The notes beneath the pieces are model-generated. The model had not been told where the DNA came from, searched no databases, and worked only from the letters and a program-made list of their open reading frames with translations. The position numbers and the translations under genes are program-made. DNA of 64,000 bases, taken from IMG/VR virus record IMGVR_UViG_3300030099_004448, positions 62,001 through 126,000 of that record; one strand, 5' to 3'. Positions 24,651 through 64,000 of the stretch are shown here, in pieces; position 1 is the stretch's first letter; each line of letters opens with the position of its first letter.

Positions 24651-24723
24651 CGTTCTCTGGTTAAATAGTAATGGATGCCTTCGGGGTCCACACAACGTTA
24701 CTCGCTTAATCAAGGAGAACCAC

Positions 24724-25158
24724 ATGACAGACCTAATGCGTTTCAATGCGTCAGACCTTCCTGCGCTCTTAGAACGATTGAATAAAAACAGCATCGGAAT
24801 GGATGAATACTTTGACCGACTCTTTAAAGTTCACGAAAGTACGCAAAATTATCCGCCGTACAATGTGATACAGTTAAATAATGTCGAGACGGTGTTAGAA
24901 TTAGCGCTCGCAGGATTTAAACAAGATGAAGTCAATGTTTACACAGAATATGGTAAACTTTTTGTTGAAGGGACAAAAGACGACAAGAAGAGTGACCATC
25001 AGTACATCCACCGTGGAGTTGCTCAAAGATCTTTTAAGAGAGCATGGACAATCTCAGACGATCAGGAGATTGCATCAGTCAGCTTTGAAGATGGGTTACT
25101 GAGTATCAAACTAGGTAAGGTTATACCTGATCACTATAAGAGAAAAGATTGGTTATGA
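24724..25158 (+). CDS. hsp20: Small heat-shock protein Hsp20/IbpA
   Basis: NYPPYNV, LELALAGF, YIHRGVAQRSFKRAW, FEDGLL; AAGGAG SD. Confidence 0.95.
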   Translation: MTDLMRFNASDLPALLERLNKNSIGMDEYFDRLFKVHESTQNYPPYNVIQLNNVETVLELALAGFKQDEVNVYTEYGKLFVEGTKDDKKSDHQYIHRGVAQRSFKRAWTISDDQEIASVSFEDGLLSIKLGKVIPDHYKRKDWL

Positions 25159-25192
25159 TTTTCTCATAAATATTAACGAATATCGTCGCCGC

Positions 25193-25235
25193 AGGGGCGC
25201 AACTGGCAAAATCCAGTTGCAACCCCTCTTTTTTT
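25193..25235 (+). terminator. Long hairpin terminator after hsp20 (possible small late RNA from CATAAATA at 25165)
   Basis: AGGGG..GCAACTGG-CAAAAT-CCAGTTGC..CCCCT plus T-run. Confidence 0.75.
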
Positions 25236-25307
25236 ATGTCTATATAATTTGTTAGGACGTACTTACCCATTTATGGATGGGTAACTATATCCTCTACATT
25301 AAATGAA

Positions 25308-25529
25308 ATGACTAAACTATTCGTTCTTCCCCTAATGGTTGCTACTCTTGCATCCATCACGGGAGGTACTGTTGCAGAAGCAAAAGGTTGGAATTCTGGA
25401 AGTCCTGGTGGTAAACCTGGATTTATCAATCGTCCAAAGAAACGCTGTACATTCAAACGTCCATGTTCACGAATGCCTGAACTTCCTGATTTTGGTACTC
25501 CAATGCCTAGGGGTGGATTTCGCCGTTGA
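25308..25529 (+). CDS. Small secreted cationic peptide
   Basis: Signal peptide ending AEA; mature part K/R/G/P-rich with C-x5-C; followed by a terminator. Confidence 0.65.
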   Translation: MTKLFVLPLMVATLASITGGTVAEAKGWNSGSPGGKPGFINRPKKRCTFKRPCSRMPELPDFGTPMPRGGFRR

Positions 25530-25534
25530 TATAC

Positions 25535-25558
25535 AGAGACCTTCGGGTCTCTTTTTTT
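25535..25558 (+). terminator. Rho-independent terminator
   Basis: AGAGACC-TTCG-GGTCTCT plus T-run. Confidence 0.9.
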
Positions 25559-25559
25559 A

Positions 25560-25568
25560 TGTTATAAT
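25560..25568 (+). promoter_or_regulatory. Extended -10 promoter for ndhD
   Basis: TGTTATAAT 24 nt upstream of the ATG. Confidence 0.55.
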
Positions 25569-25592
25569 ATAGGTGACTTTTTTGCCTAAAAC

Positions 25593-27140
25593 ATGCCTTG
25601 GTTGAGTTTATCAATATTGTTTCCAATTACTGCCGCACTTGGCATTCCTCTTCTACCAGATAAGGGAGATGGAAAAGTTGTTCGGTGGTATGGATTATCA
25701 ATCACATTAATCACGTTTTTAATTACTGTTGCTGGGTATATCAATGGGTATGATCCCTCAGTAAGCGATCTACAAATGTCCGAGAGGATTAGTTGGTTGC
25801 CTGAACTGGGTCTAACCTGGTCTGTGGGTGCAGACGGTCTATCGATGCCTCTCATTCTTCTGACAAGTTTTATCACCAGTCTTGCAGCACTCGCTGCATG
25901 GCCTCTTAGATTCAAACCAAAATTATTTTTCTTCCTGCTATTACTTATGGATGGTGGGCAGATTATGGTTTTTGCAGTACAGGATCTCATTCTATTTTTC
26001 CTATCCTGGGAACTGGAACTATTACCTGTTTATCTAATGCTTGCGATCTGGGGTGGTAAAAGACGCCAGTACGCTGCAACTAAATTCATCATTTACACTG
26101 CAGGTAGTTCTCTATTCATTCTTATTGCAGGACTTGCAATGGGATTCTGGGCATCAAACGGTTCTCCGAACTTTGAATACACTTATTTGATGAATCAGGG
26201 ATTCCCAAAAAATTTCCAACTTTGGTGTTATGCAGGATTCTTGATTGCCTTTGGTGTCAAACTCCCAATCGTGCCCTTGCACACTTGGTTGCCTGATGCA
26301 CACGGTGAAGCAACTGCACCAGTTCATATGTTGCTTGCAGGTATTCTTTTGAAGATGGGTGGATATGCACTTCTGCGATTCAACTGTCAACTCTTGCCTG
26401 ATGCACATTCCGTATTTGCTCCAGTCCTTATTGTTCTTGGAGTTGTTAATATCATCTATGCGGCATTGACATCATTTGCACAGAGAAATCTCAAACGCAA
26501 GATCGCATATAGTTCGATCAGTCACATGGGATTTGTACTCATTGGTATCGGAAGTTATAGTGTTCTCGGAACCAGTGGTGCGATGCTCCAAATGGTTAGT
26601 CATGGTCTGATTGGTGCATCTCTATTCTTCCTAGTGGGTGCAACATATGACCGAACTCATACTCTCGAACTCGCTGAGATGGGTGGAGTTGGTAAGAGTA
26701 TGAAGATTATGTTTGCGATGTGGGTTGTGTGCTCTATGGCATCCTTGGCACTGCCAGGTATGAGTGGATTTGCGAGTGAACTTATGGTCTTTGCTGGATT
26801 TGCAACTGACACGATGTATTCTATTACTTTCCGTGCATTCATTTGTGTCCTTGCTGCAATCGGTGTGATCTTGACTCCGATTTATCTTCTTTCCATGTTG
26901 CGGGAGATCTTCTTTGGTAAAGAGAACTTGGAACTTGTCAATCATACAAACCTTGTCGATGCAGAACCCAGAGAGATCTACATCATTAGTTGTCTTTTGG
27001 TTCCCATCATTGGAATTGGATTGTTCCCCAGGATTATGACGGATACTTACAAAACCTCCATTGATGCCTTGGTTAACAGGGATAAGATTGCGTTAGTCCG
27101 ACCGCAACTGGTCAGAACATTCACTCCACCAACTGTATAA
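25593..27140 (+). CDS. ndhD: NAD(P)H-quinone oxidoreductase (NDH-1) subunit 4, NdhD1/D2 type
   Basis: [80 protein letters not shown]; full length. Confidence 0.97.
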
Positions 27141-27146
27141 ATTATC

Positions 27147-27184
27147 AAGGAAGGTTTGACGCCTTCCTTTTTTTGTGGTATCCT
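27147..27184 (+). terminator. Terminator after ndhD overlapping a sigma70 promoter for the gp43 operon
   Basis: AAGGAAGG-TTTGACG-CCTTCCTT plus T-run; TTGACG(27156)-N17-TATCCT(27179). Confidence 0.75.
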
Positions 27185-27205
27185 AGTGGGAGGTAAACTG
27201 TAGTT

Positions 27206-27571
27206 ATGTCAATTAAATTAGCTCTTCTGAAGTCAGGAGAAACGGTGATTGCTGATGTTCAAGCGAAGGTAGATCAAAATGATAGAGTAGTTTCTATTGC
27301 TTTCAAAGATCCTTTCTGTGTGGAATTGGTAACTCCATCTGTTGATTTTGATGCAGAGGAAGGTGAAGTAGAAAAAGAATATGCGGTAAGGTTTTGGTCC
27401 TGGATGCCTCTGACAGATGATGAGGAAATTAAAGTAAATCCAGATTGGATTGTGTCTTTTACTACTCCTAAAGAAGACATTCTCAATTCCTATCAGGAAA
27501 GGATGGGTGATGAACCTGAATCTTTAGAGGGAGAAACACTTGTAGATAATTTTGAGGTACTAAATGGATGA
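27206..27571 (+). CDS. Sm-like conserved cyanophage protein
   Basis: MSIKLALLKSGETVIADV...P...SWMPLT...DWIV...P...Y. Confidence 0.7.
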   Translation: MSIKLALLKSGETVIADVQAKVDQNDRVVSIAFKDPFCVELVTPSVDFDAEEGEVEKEYAVRFWSWMPLTDDEEIKVNPDWIVSFTTPKEDILNSYQERMGDEPESLEGETLVDNFEVLNG

Positions 27572-27815
27572 TTTAATTCAGATAATTGTTCTGGTTGATG
27601 GAACAATTCTAATTTCAAAAATTGGTCAAGTTATTTCAGAACTTGGTGAACCAGATTGCCGTTTGATCCAACCACATGTTGTGGAAGGTCTTCGGCCTTG
27701 GTTAGAAAACTTGACTGACCAGACCGATGACATTATGATTTCATCGGATAAGATCTTGACTTTGGTTGACCCCAAAGATGACCTACTTAATGATTATTTG
27801 ACCCTCACTAAATGA
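27564..27815 (+). CDS. Sm-like conserved cyanophage protein
   Basis: IVLVDGTILISKI...GEPDCRLIQP...PW...ISSDKILTLVDP. Confidence 0.65.
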   Translation: MDDLIQIIVLVDGTILISKIGQVISELGEPDCRLIQPHVVEGLRPWLENLTDQTDDIMISSDKILTLVDPKDDLLNDYLTLTK

Positions 27816-30310
27816 AGTTCTACACGAGCGTTGTTCTCCTTGGTAATGATATCCTTGTCCGTGGATATGAAAACGGCAAACACTTCACGAAACGCGAACC
27901 CTTCCAACCCAGGTTCTTTGTTCCGTCAAAACGAGAGAGTAAATATAAAACCCTTGATGGTCAAGATGTAGAACCCATTCGCCCTGGTACTATCCGAGAG
28001 TGTCGTGAATTCTTGGACAAGTATAATGATGTGAATGGATTTAAGGTCTATGGGAATGACCGATTTGTGTATCAATACATTGCTCAGAATTATCCTGAGG
28101 AAGAAATCAAATTTGATATCTCAAAGATCAAAGTTATTACAATCGATATTGAGGTTGCAGCGGAGAGTGGATTCCCCGATGTATTCAATTGCGCTGAAGA
28201 ACTTCTACTGATTACAGTTCAAGATTATAATACCAAACAGATTACTACCTTTGGATCTCGTCCTGCAAAGGTTGATCAGAAGAATGTCAGATTTGTGTAC
28301 TGTGATGGTGAGTATGAACTCATTACCAAGTTCATGGACTGGTGGCAGAATAACACGCCAGAGGTCGTTACAGGGTGGAATAACGAACTGTATGACATGC
28401 CTTACCTGGTTGGTAGGATCACCCGTCTGATGGGAGAGAAGTACGCCAAACGTCTCTCTCCGTGGAATGTGGTGCGTGTCAAAGAGGTCACGATCATGGG
28501 TCGGAAACAACTCAGCACAGAGATCGCGGGTGTGTCTATTCTGGATTACCTAGACCTCTATAAGAAGTCTCCTGCAACTCCAAACCAAGAGAGTTATCGA
28601 TTGGATCATATCGCCTTCATGGAGTTGGGTCAGAATAAACTGGATCACTCCGAATATGATACCTTCCGAGAGTTCTACACAAATGATTGGCAGAAGTTCG
28701 TTGAATACAACATCGTTGACGTGGAACTGGTTGACCGTCTTGAGGACAAACTGCGTCTGATTGACTTGTGTTTCACCCGTGCGTTTGACGCTAAGGTGAA
28801 CTTCAATGACATTGCATACCAGGTACGAACCTGGGACGCTATCATCTACAACTATCTTCTTAAGAAGAATATTGTGATTCCTCAGAAGGAACGCAATAGT
28901 AAGAGTGAAAAGTATGCGGGTGCGTTCGTAAAAGAACCCATCCCAGGTGCATACGAGTGGGTAGTCAACTTTGACCTTAACTCACTGTACCCTCACCTGA
29001 TTATGCAGTACAATATCTCACCAGAGACTTTGATTGAACAACGTCACCCCAGTGTGACTGTCGATAAAGTTCTGAAGAAAGAACTTACCTTTGAGATGTA
29101 TAAAGACAGTGCGGTTTGTGCTAATGGTGCAATGTATCGCAAGGATGTCCGTGGGTTCCTACCAGAACTTATGGAGAAGATGTATAGTGAACGTGTTATC
29201 TTCAAGAAGAAGATGATCGAGGCGAAGAAAGCCTATGAGAAGACTCCTACCAAAGCATTGGAGAAAGAGATTTCACGTTGTGACAATATTCAGATGGCTA
29301 AAAAGATTGCACTGAACTCTGCTTATGGTGCGATTGGTAATGAGTATTTCCGATACTACAAACTTGCAAATGCAGAGGCGATCACTTTATCGGGACAGGT
29401 ATCGATTCAGTGGATCGAAGAGAAGATGAATAGTTACCTGAACAAAGTTTTGAAATCTGATGGAGTAGATTATGTCATTGCTATTGATACCGATTCCATT
29501 TATCTTAATATGGGTCCTTTTGTTGACGCTGTATTCAAGGGTAGAGAGGCTTCTACTGAAGAGATTGTTAATTTCCTTGATAAGGTCAGTCACATGGAAC
29601 TTGAAAAGTATATTGAGAGTTCTTACGAAGAATTGGCCAACTACCTCAACGCCTACGAAAACAAAATGGTGATGAAACGCGAGAACATCGCGGAACGTGG
29701 TATTTGGACTGGTAAGAAACGTTATATCCTTCGTGTGTGGGACAGTGAAGGTGTTCGTTATGAGAAACCCAAACTGAAGATGATGGGTATTGAGGCAATC
29801 AAAACCTCAACCCCTGCACCTTGTCGTCAATACATTAAAGATGCACTTGAGATCATCATGACAAAAGAAGAGGATGATGTCATTGACTTCATCGAGAGTG
29901 CTCGCAAAGAGTTCAGGAATCTTCGTCCTGATGAAATCGCATTTCCCCGTAGTGTATCTGAAATTAAGAAATGGGAATCTCGCACTGACATGTATAATAA
30001 AGGTTGTCCTATTCATGTTCGTGGTGCAATCCTCTACAATCACTATACTAAGAAAGCTGGACTTGATAAGAAGTATGCAGCAATTCAGAGTGGTGAAAAG
30101 ATCAAGTTCTGTTATTTGAAAACACCTAATACTATTCAAGAGAATGTTTTCTCCTTCATTCAAGAGTTTCCGAAAGAACTAGATCTTGAAAAGTATATTG
30201 ATTACGATGCACAGTTCAACAAATCTTTTGTAGAACCGATGAAGATTATTCTCAATGCGATTGGTTGGTCTGTAGAAAAGAAAGTAAGTTTGGAATCATT
30301 CTTCGCATGA
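27812..30310 (+). CDS. gp43: Family B DNA polymerase
   Basis: DIEV, GWN..YD, YNIVD, DLNSLYPH, KIALNSAYG, DTDS, KKRY. Confidence 0.99.
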   Translation: MKFYTSVVLLGNDILVRGYENGKHFTKREPFQPRFFVPSKRESKYKTLDGQDVEPIRPGTIRECREFLDKYNDVNGFKVYGNDRFVYQYIAQNYPEEEIKFDISKIKVITIDIEVAAESGFPDVFNCAEELLLITVQDYNTKQITTFGSRPAKVDQKNVRFVYCDGEYELITKFMDWWQNNTPEVVTGWNNELYDMPYLVGRITRLMGEKYAKRLSPWNVVRVKEVTIMGRKQLSTEIAGVSILDYLDLYKKSPATPNQESYRLDHIAFMELGQNKLDHSEYDTFREFYTNDWQKFVEYNIVDVELVDRLEDKLRLIDLCFTRAFDAKVNFNDIAYQVRTWDAIIYNYLLKKNIVIPQKERNSKSEKYAGAFVKEPIPGAYEWVVNFDLNSLYPHLIMQYNISPETLIEQRHPSVTVDKVLKKELTFEMYKDSAVCANGAMYRKDVRGFLPELMEKMYSERVIFKKKMIEAKKAYEKTPTKALEKEISRCDNIQMAKKIALNSAYGAIGNEYFRYYKLANAEAITLSGQVSIQWIEEKMNSYLNKVLKSDGVDYVIAIDTDSIYLNMGPFVDAVFKGREASTEEIVNFLDKVSHMELEKYIESSYEELANYLNAYENKMVMKRENIAERGIWTGKKRYILRVWDSEGVRYEKPKLKMMGIEAIKTSTPAPCRQYIKDALEIIMTKEEDDVIDFIESARKEFRNLRPDEIAFPRSVSEIKKWESRTDMYNKGCPIHVRGAILYNHYTKKAGLDKKYAAIQSGEKIKFCYLKTPNTIQENVFSFIQEFPKELDLEKYIDYDAQFNKSFVEPMKIILNAIGWSVEKKVSLESFFA

Positions 30311-61464: not shown

Positions 61465-61641
61465 ATGAGTCAATTCTGTTTCACTGATCTCAGTGATCAG
61501 CAACGTCGTCTCCTAATTGATGCAGTATGGATGCGTCAAAGACAATACATAGCGGGAGATAGAATGTTCCGAGAGTATGGAAAGATGCTCGATGATCTCC
61601 GTGAGGGGTTTGAAGATTATGTTCCTGGGAAGTATAGATGA
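61465..61641 (+). CDS. Small hypothetical protein (58 aa)
   Basis: Not in ORF track; LSDQQRRLLIDAVWMRQRQYIAGD; ATGA overlap with zwf. Confidence 0.65.
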   Translation: MSQFCFTDLSDQQRRLLIDAVWMRQRQYIAGDRMFREYGKMLDDLREGFEDYVPGKYR

Positions 61642-62987
61642 GTAGACTTGTTATATTCGGTGCGACAGGAGATCTTTGTCGCCGTAAATTGATTCCATCA
61701 TTACATAAACTTTGGGAGAAAAAATTACTTCCAACTGATTTTGTAGTTACTGGGTGTGCAAGGAGAGAGCCAACTAGAGATCAATGGATTGCATCTCTTG
61801 GTGGAGATTATCCCGAAGAATTTTTACATCTTCTAGACTATCAATCTGCAGATTTGTCTAGAGTAGATACTTTGAAGAATCTAAAACCAGCACCAGAAAC
61901 AGTATCTAGTGTTATTGAAGATACTACTTATTTTCTGTCAGTGCCACCAGAGAGATATGCAGATGCAATACAAAATCTCAAAGAAGCGGGACTTGTAGAT
62001 GATCAAGAAAGATCCAGAGTTATTATTGAAAAACCTTTTGGGACCGATTATAAATCTGCTGATAGTTTACAGTCTGTGGTGGGGAGATGTTTACGCGAGA
62101 AACAAGTATATCGCATTGACCATTATCTTGGTAAAGATACTGTTAATAATATCCTTGCCACTAGGTTTAGCAATATACTTCTTGAACCACTTTGGAACAG
62201 GAATTACGTAGAGGAAGTTCAAATCTATGCAACCGAAACTATTGGTTGTGAAGGTAGATCTCAATACTACGAAACTGCAGGTGCAGTCAGAGATATGTTA
62301 CAGAACCATATGCTTCAGGTTCTTGCATTGATTGCAATGGAAGCGCCATGTAAAATGGACGCTAAAGAGATTCGTAGAGAGAAGACAAAGGTTCTTGCTG
62401 CATCCAGATTGGGCACTAAACTAATCTGTGGTCAGTACAATGGATATAGAGATGAAGAGGGTGTAGATCCTGAATCAAGCACTCCAACCTTTGTTGCGGG
62501 TGATATTTACATTGATAACTGGAGATGGGAGGGTGTTCCATTTCACTTCATGACTGGTAAGAAAATGCCTTATCAGTGTGTTGAAGTAGTTGTTAAACTC
62601 AAGGCTCCACCACAACAATTATTTGAAGGTCATGAATACAATGACCGTATCGTAATGAGACTTCAACCACATCCACACTTCGATATCAGAATTGATATGA
62701 AGGCGCCAGGATTTAAAAATGATGTAGAGACTGCAACTCTTACACATCGTTATCCTGATTGGTTGGGAGTTGACGGGTATGAAAAACTACTGTATGATGC
62801 TATACAAGGAAACCAATCCAACTTCGTTCACTCCGAAGAAGTATTAGAATCCTGGAGAATCGTTGATGATCTTCTCTGCACTGGAGATAAGTGCCCTATC
62901 ACGACTATTCCTTATTTGTATAATTATGGTTCTTGGGGCCCTCAACAAAAAACAGATTCAATTACTAATTGGGATTATCCCGCATGA
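61638..62987 (+). CDS. zwf: Glucose-6-phosphate dehydrogenase
   Basis: FGATGDL, IEKPFG, YRIDHYLGK, RDMLQNH, NWRWEGVPF. Confidence 0.98.
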   Translation: MSRLVIFGATGDLCRRKLIPSLHKLWEKKLLPTDFVVTGCARREPTRDQWIASLGGDYPEEFLHLLDYQSADLSRVDTLKNLKPAPETVSSVIEDTTYFLSVPPERYADAIQNLKEAGLVDDQERSRVIIEKPFGTDYKSADSLQSVVGRCLREKQVYRIDHYLGKDTVNNILATRFSNILLEPLWNRNYVEEVQIYATETIGCEGRSQYYETAGAVRDMLQNHMLQVLALIAMEAPCKMDAKEIRREKTKVLAASRLGTKLICGQYNGYRDEEGVDPESSTPTFVAGDIYIDNWRWEGVPFHFMTGKKMPYQCVEVVVKLKAPPQQLFEGHEYNDRIVMRLQPHPHFDIRIDMKAPGFKNDVETATLTHRYPDWLGVDGYEKLLYDAIQGNQSNFVHSEEVLESWRIVDDLLCTGDKCPITTIPYLYNYGSWGPQQKTDSITNWDYPA

Positions 62988-63223
62988 CACCCACTATTGA
63001 CCCGACAGATCCAAGGTACTTTCTACAAACCTCGGATAAACCATACGATAGACACCAATACGTTCTATCGTACAATGGAGAAAAAGAATTACTATTTGAG
63101 GATTACGATCACTTGAGAGCTTACTGGTTTGAAACAGTTCGCAATTTCAGTGGGTGTACCGTACAAGTTTTAGATATCAAAAAGGACAAGAAAAAGTCGA
63201 AGTCGAAAGGAGGATTCAAATGA
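62984..63223 (+). CDS. Hypothetical protein between zwf and gnd
   Basis: QTSDKPYDRH...SKGGF; ATGA-coupled on both sides. Confidence 0.75.
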   Translation: MTPTIDPTDPRYFLQTSDKPYDRHQYVLSYNGEKELLFEDYDHLRAYWFETVRNFSGCTVQVLDIKKDKKKSKSKGGFK

Positions 63224-64000
63224 AAGTTGGAATGATTGGACTAGGACGGATGGGTGAAGGCATGTCTCGCCGTCTTATTGCAGCAGGACACGAAGTACAT
63301 GGGTATCGTAACAATGTTAAAAAAGCTGAAGAACAATATGAGAAGGGTTATATCAGTGGATTTACCACTTCTCTGGAAAGCCTTGTTCAAGTAATAAAAA
63401 CAGGTGTTGGAACACTTACCCAGGAAGAATCAAAATCTCCTGGAGTCTATATGATGGTAGTACCAGCAGAGACCGTAGAGGATACACTTAATGAGCTATT
63501 ACAGTTTTGTAACGAGGGAGATATTATTATTGATCATGGCAATAGTAATTTTAAGGACAGTCGGAGACGGGCAGAACGTCTTGCAAAACTGGGCATCCAA
63601 TATCTTGACTGTGGTACTAGTGGTGGTGTGTATGGTCTGGAGCGTGGATTCTGTCTCATGGTTGGTGGCGGAAAGTCTGCAGTCGATGTCTGCCGTCCAC
63701 TCTTTGACGCACTCTCACCAGGCATCGGTGCCGCTCCTAGGACCAATGATTCAGACAACTTCACATGGTATCCTGAGGAGTATGGATGGATCTACGCTGG
63801 TCCAGCTGGTGCAGGTCATTTTGTAAAGATGGTTCACAATGGAATCGAATACGGAATCATGCAAGCCTACGCCGAAGGCTTTAATATCCTGCATGAGGCT
63901 AATGCTGGGTCAGTTTATGTTAAAGAGGGCGATGCTGAGGTTGCTCCGATGGAGAATCCGAAAGACTATTGCTACGACATTGACGTTGCTAAAGTGGCTG
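63220..64000 (+). CDS. gnd: 6-phosphogluconate dehydrogenase (3'-truncated by window edge)
   Basis: Not in ORF track; MKVGMIGLGRMG, MVVPA, IDHGNS, DCGTSGG, GAGHFVKMVHNGIEYGIMQAYAEG. Confidence 0.97.
   Translation, partial: MKVGMIGLGRMGEGMSRRLIAAGHEVHGYRNNVKKAEEQYEKGYISGFTTSLESLVQVIKTGVGTLTQEESKSPGVYMMVVPAETVEDTLNELLQFCNEGDIIIDHGNSNFKDSRRRAERLAKLGIQYLDCGTSGGVYGLERGFCLMVGGGKSAVDVCRPLFDALSPGIGAAPRTNDSDNFTWYPEEYGWIYAGPAGAGHFVKMVHNGIEYGIMQAYAEGFNILHEANAGSVYVKEGDAEVAPMENPKDYCYDIDVAKVA

What the first reader, a model, noticed from the sequence alone, without database searches (positions are those of the whole stretch)
25535..27184. Full-length ndhD as a self-contained expression cassette in the replication module
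Seen: an intact 515-aa NdhD1/D2-type subunit with an upstream terminator, its own extended -10 and a downstream terminator, placed between hsp20 and the two genes preceding gp43. No other ndh gene is in the window. Known: swapping NdhD/NdhF paralogs defines NDH-1 function (respiration/cyclic flow versus CO2 uptake). To my knowledge ndhD is a rare cyanophage gene reported mainly from metagenomes. Inference: the phage supplies one exchangeable proton-pumping subunit to bias host NDH-1 towards cyclic electron flow and ATP.
Basis: partly seen in the sequence, partly recalled or inferred. Interest (0 to 1): 0.68.

Follow-up and report, generated by a model that had tools for sequence, protein, structure and literature searches.

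The report
Phage-borne NdhD1 gene on a mobile cassette
A large marine cyanophage carries an intact, strongly conserved copy of its host's NdhD1 subunit of the NDH-1L complex, with its own promoter. The gene is real and probably helps keep cyclic electron flow and ATP supply going during infection, but phage ndhD has already been reported.

Summary
Window 25593-27140 (+) encodes an intact 515-aa NdhD. It is preceded by a hairpin terminator and TGTTATAAT, and followed by a second terminator. It lies between hsp20 and the two DUF6561 genes before gp43.

The protein is NdhD1-type. It scores 948 bits on NCBIfam NF002713 (cut-off 827) and 750 bits against T. elongatus NdhD1, but only 285 against NdhD3. 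All proton-channel residues are kept.

It is not an assembly artefact. The window belongs to a 238.9-kb complete cyanomyovirus related to the isolate S-SCSM2R, which has ndhD at the same locus. In all, 63 IMG/VR contigs carry it, mostly in the same slot.

Phage NdhDs form one clade (UFBoot 97) inside picocyanobacterial NdhD1. Pairwise dN/dS is 0.04-0.11 and base composition matches the phage.

The terminator plus extended -10 unit is conserved upstream of 33-35 of 37 distinct loci. It resembles the PeSL shuffling cassettes of T4-like phages, and recombination breakpoints fall at these units.

The genome also encodes NdhP, the NdhD1-binding peptide, but ndhP is common in cyanophages that lack ndhD.

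Function is inferred, not shown: supplying NDH-1L for cyclic flow, respiration and ATP. Phage ndhD was published in 2011 (metagenomes) and 2025 (S-SCSM2R), so this is a new member of a known kind.

The parts
24724..25158 (+). hsp20 (small heat-shock protein), the conserved left neighbour of the variable slot
   Evidence: Pfam HSP20, E 3.2e-13. It lies upstream of ndhD in most phage loci.
25193..25248 (+). Composite terminator/promoter after hsp20: a long GGGG...CCCC hairpin, a T-run at 25229-25235, and TATAAT at 25243-25248
   Evidence: Sequence read; picked up by the PeSL-like scan (dG -21). In most other lineages this same hairpin stands directly before ndhD. In some lineages it stands after ndhD.
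25308..25529 (+). orf73, a small ORF of unknown function inserted between hsp20 and ndhD
   Evidence: ORF. No Pfam or NCBIfam match. It is 86-98% nt identical to S-SCSM2R but absent from the otherwise nearest relatives L004 and L005. It is also present in S-IOM18, S-P4 and S-E7.
25535..25568 (+). Composite terminator/promoter before ndhD: hairpin 25535-25552, T-run 25553-25558, extended -10 TGTTATAAT 25560-25568
   Evidence: The equivalent unit is conserved in 33-35 of 37 distinct phage ndhD upstream regions.
25593..27140 (+). [quoted passage not shown]
   Evidence: Identity. Phage clade. Conserved residues. Purifying selection and composition.
27147..27184 (+). Terminator after ndhD (hairpin 27147-27169 plus T-run), overlapping a weak promoter-like site (TTGACG-17-TATCCT, TG-extended) for the next gene
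   Evidence: Present in the window's clade and some others, in 21 of 41 distinct downstream regions.
27206..27815 (+). Two DUF6561 genes (27206-27571 and 27564-27815), the conserved right neighbours that precede gp43
   Evidence: Pfam DUF6561, E 4.9e-6 and 4.1e-24. Syntenic in nearly all loci and in phages without ndhD.
27812..30310 (+). gp43 DNA polymerase, the anchor of the replication module
   Evidence: tblastn: 92% to S-SCSM2R DNA polymerase and 66-74% to other cyanomyoviruses.

Best explanation
This is a virus-owned auxiliary metabolic gene: an orthologue of the host's NdhD1, the antiporter-like proton-pumping subunit that defines the NDH-1L form of cyanobacterial NDH-1.

Shown here:
- The gene was captured once from a picocyanobacterium, long ago.
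- It has since been inherited and exchanged among T4-like cyanophages as a small cassette bounded by composite terminator/promoter units.
- It is kept under strong purifying selection with every proton-channel residue intact.

Inferred:
- The host RNA polymerase with its primary sigma factor reads the extended -10 promoter, so expression is early or middle rather than late.
- The protein inserts into the thylakoid membrane and joins host NDH-1M and NdhF1, together with NdhP, which the phage also encodes, to build or replenish NDH-1L.
For: Identity:
- Pfam Proton_antipo_M, E 1.8e-64.
- NCBIfam NF002713, 948 bits against a cut-off of 827.
- Best solved relative is T. elongatus NdhD1, 6hum_D, at 750 bits. 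NdhD3 (6tjv_D) scores 285.
- 77-81% identical to one paralogue in each picocyanobacterial genome, against about 55% and about 40% for the other two.

Intactness:
- The equivalents of E. coli NuoM E144, K234, K265 and E407 are E140, K223, K254 and E396.
- These, and His230, His311 and His337, are invariant in 51 phage and 80 cellular sequences.
- Only 7 alignment columns separate phage from cell, and all the changes are conservative.

Residence in the phage:
- Same locus in the isolate S-SCSM2R.
- 63 IMG/VR contigs carry it, about 50 of them in the regA-hsp20-ndhD-DUF6561-gp43 order, even where gp43 is only 64-70% identical.
- The phage sequences form one clade: SH-aLRT 100 in a 140-row tree, and UFBoot 97 / SH-aLRT 94 in a careful 59-row tree, with a stem of about 0.45.
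- dN/dS is 0.04-0.11 between phage copies.
- GC3 is 0.38 and the genome GC 0.39, against GC3 0.69-0.77 in Synechococcus ndhD1.
- 14 DNA runs from at least 5 studies hold 87% or more of the sampled words of 24700-28000, and a contig bridges the upstream junction in two of them.

Expression unit: the upstream terminator plus -10 unit is conserved. Contigs from two metatranscriptome libraries cover parts of ndhD at 90-97% identity.

Partner:
- The genome encodes a 44-aa NdhP (PDB 6khi_P, E 1e-8).
- In the literature NdhP and NdhQ contact only NdhD1, stabilise the NdhD1-NdhB link, and are specific to NDH-1L.
- The fold of phage NdhD with phage NdhP gave ipSAE 0.70 against a best control of 0.00. 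That mark was reached by 51 of 78 solved complexes and 2 of 108 mismatched pairs. The runs agreed in at least 96% of contacts and the partner's pLDDT was at least 73.

Context: the same genome carries psbA, psbD, hli, petF, talC, zwf and gnd.
Against: - There is no direct evidence of transcription during infection, of the protein, or of its presence in NDH-1L.
- RNA-library contigs can derive from DNA and come from relatives, not from this genome.
- The complex prediction may simply recall the solved NDH-1L structures.
- ndhP is not specific to phages with ndhD. It is present in 3 of 5 isolates that lack ndhD and in more than 532 IMG/VR stretches, so its presence adds little.
- No -35 element is evident, and promoter class and timing are guessed from sequence.
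- Published physiology for S-SCSM2R covers PSII parameters only and does not address NDH-1.
- The gene is absent from about 99% of sequenced cyanomyovirus isolates, so any benefit is conditional.
Confidence: 0.6

Rival explanations
1. Competitive re-programming. The main effect of the phage NdhD1 is to out-compete NdhD3/NdhD4 for the shared NDH-1M core. That would shut down NDH-1MS/MS' CO2 uptake and divert reducing power, in line with the phage's pentose-phosphate genes. Topping up NDH-1L would be secondary. This is the sharper form of the first reader's idea.
For: - The phage copy is D1-type, not D3/D4-type.
- Synechococcus genomes carry a third, roughly 40%-identical paralogue of the CO2-uptake kind that shares the core.
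- The same genome carries zwf, gnd and talC.
- NDH-1 variants differ by their NdhD/NdhF isoforms on a common NDH-1M module.
Against: - Prochlorococcus MIT 0916 has no D3/D4-type paralogue, yet the related phage S-SCSM2R is described as cross-infecting Prochlorococcus and Synechococcus, so competition cannot be the general benefit.
- The phage does not carry ndhF1, which NDH-1L also needs.
- No measurement of CO2 uptake in infected cells was found.
Confidence: 0.2
2. Altered-function or poison subunit. The phage protein enters NDH-1 but changes or blocks its activity, or it works outside NDH-1 as a stand-alone cation/proton transporter.
For: - The protein is slightly shorter than host NdhD1, by about 4 aa at the N-terminus and about 15 aa at the C-terminus.
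- It has a few phage-specific substitutions at positions 29, 133, 138, 149, 265 and 382.
- The family (PF00361) includes Mrp antiporter subunits.
Against: - All channel residues are invariant, and 319 of 514 columns are invariant among phages, a constraint like that in cells (309 of 514).
- The phage-specific changes are conservative (I/L/M, S/A, C/A/V).
- Mrp-type NCBIfam models score far below their cut-offs.
Confidence: 0.07
3. Neutral passenger. The gene is a hitch-hiking piece of host DNA in a hyperplastic slot with no selected function.
For: - It lies in a variable slot that holds other cargo in other phages.
- It is absent from most isolates.
Against: - dN/dS is 0.04-0.11 across deep phage divergences.
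- No disrupted copy was seen among 51 full-length sequences.
- Its amino-acid divergence between distant phages is less than half that of gp43 (dN about 0.10 against about 0.25).
Confidence: 0.03
4. Artefact: a chimeric assembly or host contamination.
For: - The window comes from a metagenome-derived IMG/VR record.
- In the two DNA runs that were laid, no contig was listed beyond position 26809.
Against: - The cultured isolate S-SCSM2R has the same arrangement, aligned in one piece across both junctions.
- Contigs L014 and L051, from other samples, are 100% identical across the right and left junctions.
- A contig spanning 25488-26258 bridges the left junction in two independent runs.
- Composition, the tree and saturated synonymous divergence from host genes all argue against it.
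- The tool itself states that a hole in contig coverage proves nothing.
Confidence: 0.01

Closest known systems
ndhD (ORF157) of Synechococcus phage S-SCSM2R (PQ898602; BMC Biol 2025, PMC12801897)
   Same: The same gene in the same slot (sHsp - small ORF - NdhD - two DUF6561 genes - DNA polymerase). It is 89% identical in protein and 84% in DNA across both junctions. The genomes are of the same size class (244 kb against 239 kb), and both also carry ndhP.
   Different: This is a different strain or species: gp43 is 92% and hsp20 only 58% identical. The window's ndhD allele is closer to uncultured contigs (97-100%). The region is a mosaic of an L005-like backbone, an S-SCSM2R-like orf73 and an L004-like ndhD.
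Cellular NdhD1 of the NDH-1L complex (picocyanobacteria; T. elongatus NdhD1, PDB 6HUM/6KHI chain D)
   Same: 77-81% identity to picocyanobacterial NdhD1. It aligns end to end with T. elongatus NdhD1 at 750 bits. All proton-channel residues are kept, and it matches the same NCBIfam subfamily above the cut-off.
   Different: It is encoded by a virus, forms its own clade on a stem of about 0.45 substitutions per site, has phage base composition, is slightly shorter at both ends, and has its own terminator/promoter unit.
Cyanophage psbA/psbD and other photosynthetic electron-transport AMGs, including ndhP and ndhI, and the PSI-gene phage P-TIM68
   Same: The logic is the same: a phage copy of a membrane subunit of a host bioenergetic complex, thought to keep energy supply running after host shut-off. 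psbA, psbD, hli and petF are in this same genome. ndhP is reported in P-TIM68. That P-TIM68 infection enhances cyclic flow is from my own knowledge and was not checked here.
   Different: psbA is nearly universal in cyanomyoviruses and its expression is documented. ndhD is in about 1% of isolates and has no expression or assembly data. NdhD is a 14-helix, 515-aa subunit, among the largest host-complex subunits carried by these phages.
PeSL (promoter-early stem-loop) cassettes of T4-like phages (Arbiol 2010, PMC2839356; Comeau 2014, PMC4122927)
   Same: Composite stem-loop terminator plus sigma-70-type promoter units that flank accessory genes in hyperplastic regions. The stems are often GGGG...CCCC, and recombination breakpoints coincide with them.
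   Different: PeSLs were described in coliphages and vibriophages as near-identical repeats with full -35/-10 promoters and an AT-rich upstream region. Here the promoter is an extended -10 directly after the T-run with no clear -35. The three units in the window differ in stem sequence. No promoter, terminator or mini-circle assay exists.

Membership tests
[quoted passage not shown] | Scores above the curated whole-protein cut-off of the subfamily model and carries the Proton_antipo_M domain | tested here: met
   NF002713 at 948.2 bits against a cut-off of 827. PF00361 at 218 bits against a cut-off of 21.5.
[quoted passage not shown] | Groups with NdhD1 orthologues rather than with the second (NF009212-type) or the CO2-uptake (D3/D4-type) paralogues | tested here: met
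   In both trees the phage clade joins the roughly 80%-identity cellular group with 100% support, against paralogues of about 55% and 40% identity. In the PDB search NdhD1 scores 750 bits and NdhD3 285 bits.
[quoted passage not shown] | Conserved charged and histidine residues of the antiporter-like proton channel (E. coli NuoM E144, K234, K265, E407 and central His residues) | tested here: met
   E140, K223, K254, E396, H230, H311 and H337 are invariant in 51 phage and 80 cellular sequences. The residue roles come from established complex I literature, recalled from memory.
[quoted passage not shown] | The lysine that forms a salt bridge with NdhF1 Asp635 (Synechocystis NdhD1 Lys166) | tested here: inconclusive
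   K164 is invariant in phage and cell sequences, and K156 is conserved in the three-sequence alignment. No Synechocystis sequence was on hand, so Lys166 could not be mapped.
[quoted passage not shown] | Assembles into NDH-1L next to NdhB and NdhF1 and binds NdhP and NdhQ | tested here: inconclusive
   Fold of phage NdhD with phage NdhP: ipSAE 0.70 against a best control of 0.00. That mark was reached by 51 of 78 solved complexes and 2 of 108 mismatched pairs. Contact agreement was at least 96% and partner pLDDT at least 73. The score may come from memory of the solved NDH-1L structures. Assembly in cells cannot be tested here.
NdhD3/NdhD4 (CO2-uptake NDH-1MS/MS' subunit) | Closest similarity to NdhD3/D4 and linkage with ndhF3/F4 and cupA/cupB | tested here: not met
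   285 bits to 6tjv_D against 750 bits to NdhD1. 38-41% identity to the third host paralogue. There is no second PF00361 gene in the genome.
Cyanophage auxiliary metabolic gene | A host-derived metabolic gene inside a bona fide phage genome and flanked by phage genes | tested here: met
   The virus record is 238.9 kb and CheckV-complete. The flanks are regA, hsp20, DUF6561 and gp43. An isolate has the same locus.
Cyanophage auxiliary metabolic gene | Maintained by selection in the phage lineage | tested here: met
   dN/dS 0.04-0.11. No broken copy among 51 full-length sequences. The phage sequences form one clade.
Cyanophage auxiliary metabolic gene | Expressed during infection | tested here: inconclusive
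   Contigs from two metatranscriptome libraries cover parts of ndhD at 90-97% identity, but contigs cannot show transcription, strand or level. No infection RNA-seq was found.
PeSL-type mobile regulatory cassette of T4-like phages | A composite of a stable stem-loop terminator and a sigma-70-type early promoter in an intergenic region | tested here: met
   Units at 25193-25248, 25535-25568 and 27147-27184. Conserved upstream of ndhD in 33-35 of 37 distinct loci. The promoter is an extended -10 without a clear -35.
PeSL-type mobile regulatory cassette of T4-like phages | Repeated, similar copies concentrated in hyperplastic regions and flanking accessory ORFs | tested here: inconclusive
   There are 10 such composites on the coding strand of the genome, against 4 on the other strand and 0-4 in shuffles. 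Three lie within 2 kb here. Their stems differ in sequence within this genome, although the hsp20-type hairpin recurs on either side of ndhD in other lineages.
PeSL-type mobile regulatory cassette of T4-like phages | Insertion, deletion or replacement breakpoints between related phages fall at the elements | tested here: met
   Identity to L005, L004 and S-SCSM2R switches at about 25160-25250, 25535-25590 and 27000-27200. ndhD occupies other positions in S-8S53/L048, L040-42 and L037/38/45.
PeSL-type mobile regulatory cassette of T4-like phages | Demonstrated promoter and terminator activity, and mini-circle formation | not testable with these tools
   This needs reporter assays and PCR across circle junctions, as in PMC2839356.

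The most novel reading that the evidence does not exclude
NdhD1 and NdhP together form a virus-encoded kit for the NDH-1L-specific distal module. By supplying the subunit at the weak NdhB-NdhD1 joint together with its stabilising peptide, the phage re-partitions the host's shared NDH-1M cores into NDH-1L. That would raise cyclic flow and respiration, and in Synechococcus hosts it would withdraw cores from CO2 uptake. The cassette spreads between cyanomyovirus lineages through PeSL-like terminator/promoter units. That spread would explain two observations: ndhD's synonymous divergence is lower than that of gp43 between distant phages, but higher between near-identical backbones.
Probability: 0.25. 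Interest if true: 0.6.

Novelty: new member of a known kind. Interest (0 to 1): 0.4.

Why it matters
NDH-1L drives cyclic electron flow and respiration, the routes that make ATP without NADPH. Infected picocyanobacteria are thought to shift to this regime while carbon fixation is blocked.

A phage-owned copy of the subunit that defines NDH-1L, conserved more tightly than the phage's own DNA polymerase, suggests that NDH-1L supply limits some infections. A cultured relative (S-SCSM2R on Synechococcus WH7803) makes the idea testable. Phage and host NdhD1 differ at 11-20% of residues, enough to tell them apart by mass spectrometry.

The conserved terminator/promoter units also give a concrete case of how a large host gene travels between cyanophage genomes.

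The limits are clear: the gene has been reported before and its role is still only inferred.

Tried and rejected
- **ndhP specificity.** I supposed that ndhP marks phages with ndhD. All five sufficiently complete ndhD genomes or records have it. So do 3 of 5 isolates without ndhD and more than 532 IMG/VR stretches. The association is not specific, and I dropped it as evidence.
- **tblastn blank.** tblastn of the 44-aa NdhP against the phage collection found nothing, although S-SCSM2R clearly has the gene. This is a limit of the tool for a short hydrophobic query, not absence.
- **Genome-wide promoter motif.** A regex for T-run plus TGnTAnnnT across the genome gave 28 sites on the plus strand and 19 on the minus strand, against about 17 in shuffles. 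This is not a general promoter signature. Only the stricter composite of hairpin, T-run and -10 is enriched.
- **Consensus scans.** The promoter and terminator scans of the region are at chance level. I relied on conservation across loci instead.
- **Gap in DNA contigs.** The DNA-run contigs gave no listed piece beyond 26809. The tool warns that a hole proves nothing. The right junction is supported instead by S-SCSM2R, by L014/L005-type contigs, and by an RNA-library contig spanning 26780-28000.
- **Papers.** Sharon et al. 2011, the first metagenomic report of phage ndhD, is not held. A paper search for cyanophage promoter classes returned nothing useful, so promoter timing stays an inference.
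- **Donor lineage.** The sister group of the phage clade among picocyanobacteria is unresolved (support 32/0), so no donor lineage is named.
- **Searches not run.** The large protein searches (search for homologous proteins, the search of protein representatives) were not needed.
Full report
**1. The observation**

Window 25593-27140 (+) is an uninterrupted 515-codon ORF starting with ATG. Reading the flanks gives three units.
- Upstream: a 7-bp GC-rich hairpin at 25535-25552, a T-run at 25553-25558, then TGTTATAAT at 25560-25568, which ends 24 nt before the start codon.
- Downstream: a 9-bp hairpin at 27147-27169 followed by seven T. A weak promoter-like site at 27156-27184 overlaps it and faces the next gene.

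The right-hand neighbours are two DUF6561 genes and gp43. The simple consensus scans are at chance level here, so by themselves they prove nothing. The evidence for these signals comes from comparison (section 5).

**2. What the protein is**

- Pfam finds one Proton_antipo_M domain.
- The best solved relative is NdhD1 of the Thermosynechococcus NDH-1L complex (6hum_D, 750 bits, aligned end to end). NdhD3 of the CO2-uptake complex (6tjv_D) scores 285.
- Five picocyanobacterial genomes each hold paralogues at about 80%, 55% and 40% identity to the phage protein. Prochlorococcus MIT 0916 lacks the third. The 55% paralogue belongs to NF009212.
- Aligned with E. coli NuoM, the four charged channel residues E144, K234, K265 and E407 correspond to E140, K223, K254 and E396. 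These, and three central histidines, are invariant in 51 phage and 80 cellular sequences.
- Only seven alignment columns have non-overlapping residues between phage and cell, and all the changes are conservative. The phage protein is about 4 aa shorter at the N-terminus and about 15 aa shorter at the C-terminus.

So this is an intact NdhD1 orthologue.

**3. It belongs to the phage**

- The window is bases 62001-126000 of a 238,937-bp virus record rated complete, and ndhD is its only PF00361 gene.
- The cultured cyanomyovirus S-SCSM2R (244 kb) aligns at 84% over 97% of 25200-27300 in one piece. It has the same order: sHsp, small ORF, NdhD, two DUF6561 genes, DNA polymerase.
- Two further isolates, S-8S53 and S-8S56, carry an 83%-identical NdhD. 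In S-8S53 it sits elsewhere, between psbD and thymidylate synthase; the S-8S56 context was not examined.
- IMG/VR holds 63 contigs with the gene at 73-100% identity. About 50 of them show regA-hsp20-ndhD-DUF6561-gp43, even where gp43 is only 64-70% identical to the window's.
- Contigs L051 and L014, from other samples, are 100% identical across the left and right junctions.
- Fourteen DNA runs from at least five studies hold 87% or more of the sampled words of 24700-28000. A contig spanning 25488-26258 bridges the left junction in two of them.
- No contig was listed beyond 26809 in those two runs. The tool says such a hole proves nothing.
- The gene has GC3 0.38 in a genome of GC 0.39. Synechococcus ndhD1 has GC3 0.69-0.77. 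Synonymous sites are saturated against host genes (pS 0.80-0.89).

Chimeric assembly is excluded.

**4. Evolution**

- In a 140-row tree all 51 full-length phage sequences form one clade (SH-aLRT 100). It lies inside the group of roughly 80%-identical cellular NdhD1 sequences, with the two other paralogue groups outside.
- A careful 59-row tree gives the phage clade UFBoot 97 / SH-aLRT 94 on a stem of 0.47. Its sister among picocyanobacteria is unresolved. The simplest reading is one old capture.
- Between phage copies dN/dS is 0.04-0.11, like a Synechococcus-Synechococcus pair at 0.043.
- Between distant phages ndhD has dN of about 0.10, against about 0.25 for gp43. Its synonymous divergence is also lower (pS about 0.60 against about 0.72).
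- Against the near-identical backbone L005, ndhD is more diverged (dS 0.41) than gp43, regA or hsp20 (0.07-0.15).

Both patterns fit exchange of the cassette between lineages on top of strong constraint. I cannot separate the two contributions.

**5. The cassette**

- Among 37 distinct upstream sequences, 35 have a -10 hexamer 26-38 nt before the ATG. The TGn extension is present in 33, and a hairpin plus T-run immediately before it in 35. This holds although the hairpin sequences and the upstream genes differ.
- The downstream terminator is present in only 21 of 41 distinct regions. In the rest a new -10 follows the stop codon directly, so read-through into the DUF6561 genes is likely.
- Phages without ndhD have hsp20 followed directly by the two small genes and gp43 (S-SCSM1, S-CAM9). 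Others hold different cargo in the same slot (S-SSM7, Sf-FS3).
- A sliding comparison shows a mosaic:
  - hsp20 is 98% identical to L004 and L005 but 56-66% to S-SCSM2R.
  - The orf73 segment is 86-98% identical to S-SCSM2R and absent from L004 and L005.
  - ndhD is 97-100% identical to L004.
  - From about 26900 the sequence is 98-100% L005-like, while L004 diverges.
  - The switches fall at the terminator/promoter units.
- This architecture and behaviour match the PeSL elements that mediate modular shuffling in T4-like phages. The differences are that the promoter here is an extended -10 without a clear -35, and that the stems differ within this genome.
- The genome has 10 such composites on its coding strand, against 4 on the other strand and 0-4 in shuffles.

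**6. A second NDH-1L gene**

- Outside the window, at G000:C1:146259-146390, lies a 44-aa ORF. It is 82% identical to the annotated NdhP of S-SCSM2R and matches NdhP of the solved complexes (6khi_P, E 1e-8). It has a single 57-69% identical homologue in each of five host genomes.
- In the literature NdhP is specific to NDH-1L and needed for its stable assembly. NdhP and NdhQ contact only NdhD1 and act as glue for the fragile NdhD1-NdhB joint.
- A fold of phage NdhD with phage NdhP scored ipSAE 0.70 against a best control of 0.00. That mark was reached by 51 of 78 solved complexes and 2 of 108 mismatched pairs. Contact agreement was at least 96% and partner pLDDT at least 73. Because like complexes are solved, this shows likeness, not binding.
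- ndhP is present in all five sufficiently complete ndhD genomes or records. It is also in 3 of 5 isolates without ndhD, where it is not annotated, and in more than 532 IMG/VR stretches.
- So ndhP is a common cyanophage gene and ndhD a rarer addition. The pairing is suggestive but not specific.

**7. Mechanism**

Shown:
- The gene is an intact, selected, phage-resident NdhD1.
- It has a conserved private promoter unit.
- The genome also encodes the NdhD1-binding peptide, together with psbA, psbD, hli, petF, talC, zwf and gnd.

Inferred:
- The host RNA polymerase reads the extended -10. No T4-type late motif (TATAAATA) precedes the gene.
- The protein joins host NDH-1M and NdhF1 to keep or raise NDH-1L after host shut-off. 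This sustains cyclic flow, respiration and ATP.

The sharper variant is withdrawal of cores from CO2-uptake complexes. It is possible in Synechococcus but cannot be general, because some Prochlorococcus strains lack the D3/D4 type.

Contigs from two metatranscriptome libraries cover parts of ndhD at 90-97% identity, which is compatible with expression at sea but is not proof. Published physiology for S-SCSM2R covers PSII parameters only.

**8. Novelty**

- Phage ndhD was noted in metagenomes in 2011. That report is cited, and the paper itself is not held.
- It was described as a first for an isolate in S-SCSM2R in 2025.
- S-8S53 and S-8S56 carry annotated copies.
- It is rare among isolates: 3 of about 462 cyanophage records with gp43.

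The window adds a further genome. The analysis adds:
- the single-clade origin;
- the conserved slot and promoter unit;
- the strength of selection;
- the PeSL-like mobility;
- the finding that ndhP is widespread.

The finding is real and sound, but it is a new member of a known kind, and its function is still untested.

Noticed in passing
window 25308-25529 (+): orf73 is a 73-aa ORF with a hydrophobic, signal-peptide-like N-terminus and a basic Gly/Pro-rich tail. It has its own terminator/promoter units on both sides and no Pfam or NCBIfam match. It is 82-89% nt identical in S-IOM18, S-P4 and S-E7, which lack ndhD, and it is absent from the window's nearest relatives L004 and L005.
   Followed up: partly
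G000:C1:146259-146390 (outside the window); also W03:C1:158517-158645, W04:C1:129894-130022 and W06:C1:89783-89911: ndhP (44 aa) is present but not annotated in the isolates Sf-FS3, S-SCSM1 and S-CAM9, and in more than 532 IMG/VR stretches. It is therefore much commoner in cyanophages than the 2025 paper states ("only P-TIM68"). The S-SCSM2R-type phage NdhPs lack the host's N-terminal residues and carry a C-terminal KVL[KR] extension.
   Followed up: partly
window 25180-25235; the same element in L017, L024, L029, L044, L046, L049, L050 and L053 downstream of ndhD: A roughly 55-nt element (ATATCGTCG..CGC.., a long GGGG...CCCC hairpin, then a T-run) is conserved at the DNA level across phages whose flanking genes are only 55-70% identical. 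It stands after hsp20 in some lineages and after ndhD in others. It may be a recombination or regulatory element rather than a plain terminator.
   Followed up: partly
G000:C1:170352-171384 (outside the window): The psbA match in the window's genome comes as two adjacent tblastn pieces (170352-170594 and 170605-171384). This could be an intron, a frameshift or just an alignment break.
   Followed up: no
window 61638-62987 and 63154-64000: Homologues of zwf and gnd, the pentose-phosphate AMGs, lie at the right end of the window (71% and 80% identical to those of S-SCSM2R).
   Followed up: no
L034-L036 7534-12187; L037, L038 and L045: In one lineage about 4.6 kb of other DNA lies between ndhD and the DUF6561 genes. 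In another lineage the order is ndhD then hsp20 instead of hsp20 then ndhD. These are further signs of shuffling in this slot.
   Followed up: no
L112 (contig CAXQPR010000069.1): A contig binned as a Salipiger bermudensis (Roseobacteraceae) MAG carries a marine-Synechococcus-type ndhD1 and groups with Synechococcus in the tree. It is probably mis-binned.
   Followed up: no
window 25593-27140 compared with 27812-30310, against L012, L020, L024, L025 and L005: Between distant phages the synonymous divergence of ndhD is lower than that of gp43. Between near-identical backbones it is higher. This is compatible with lateral exchange of the cassette, but codon constraint was not excluded.
   Followed up: partly
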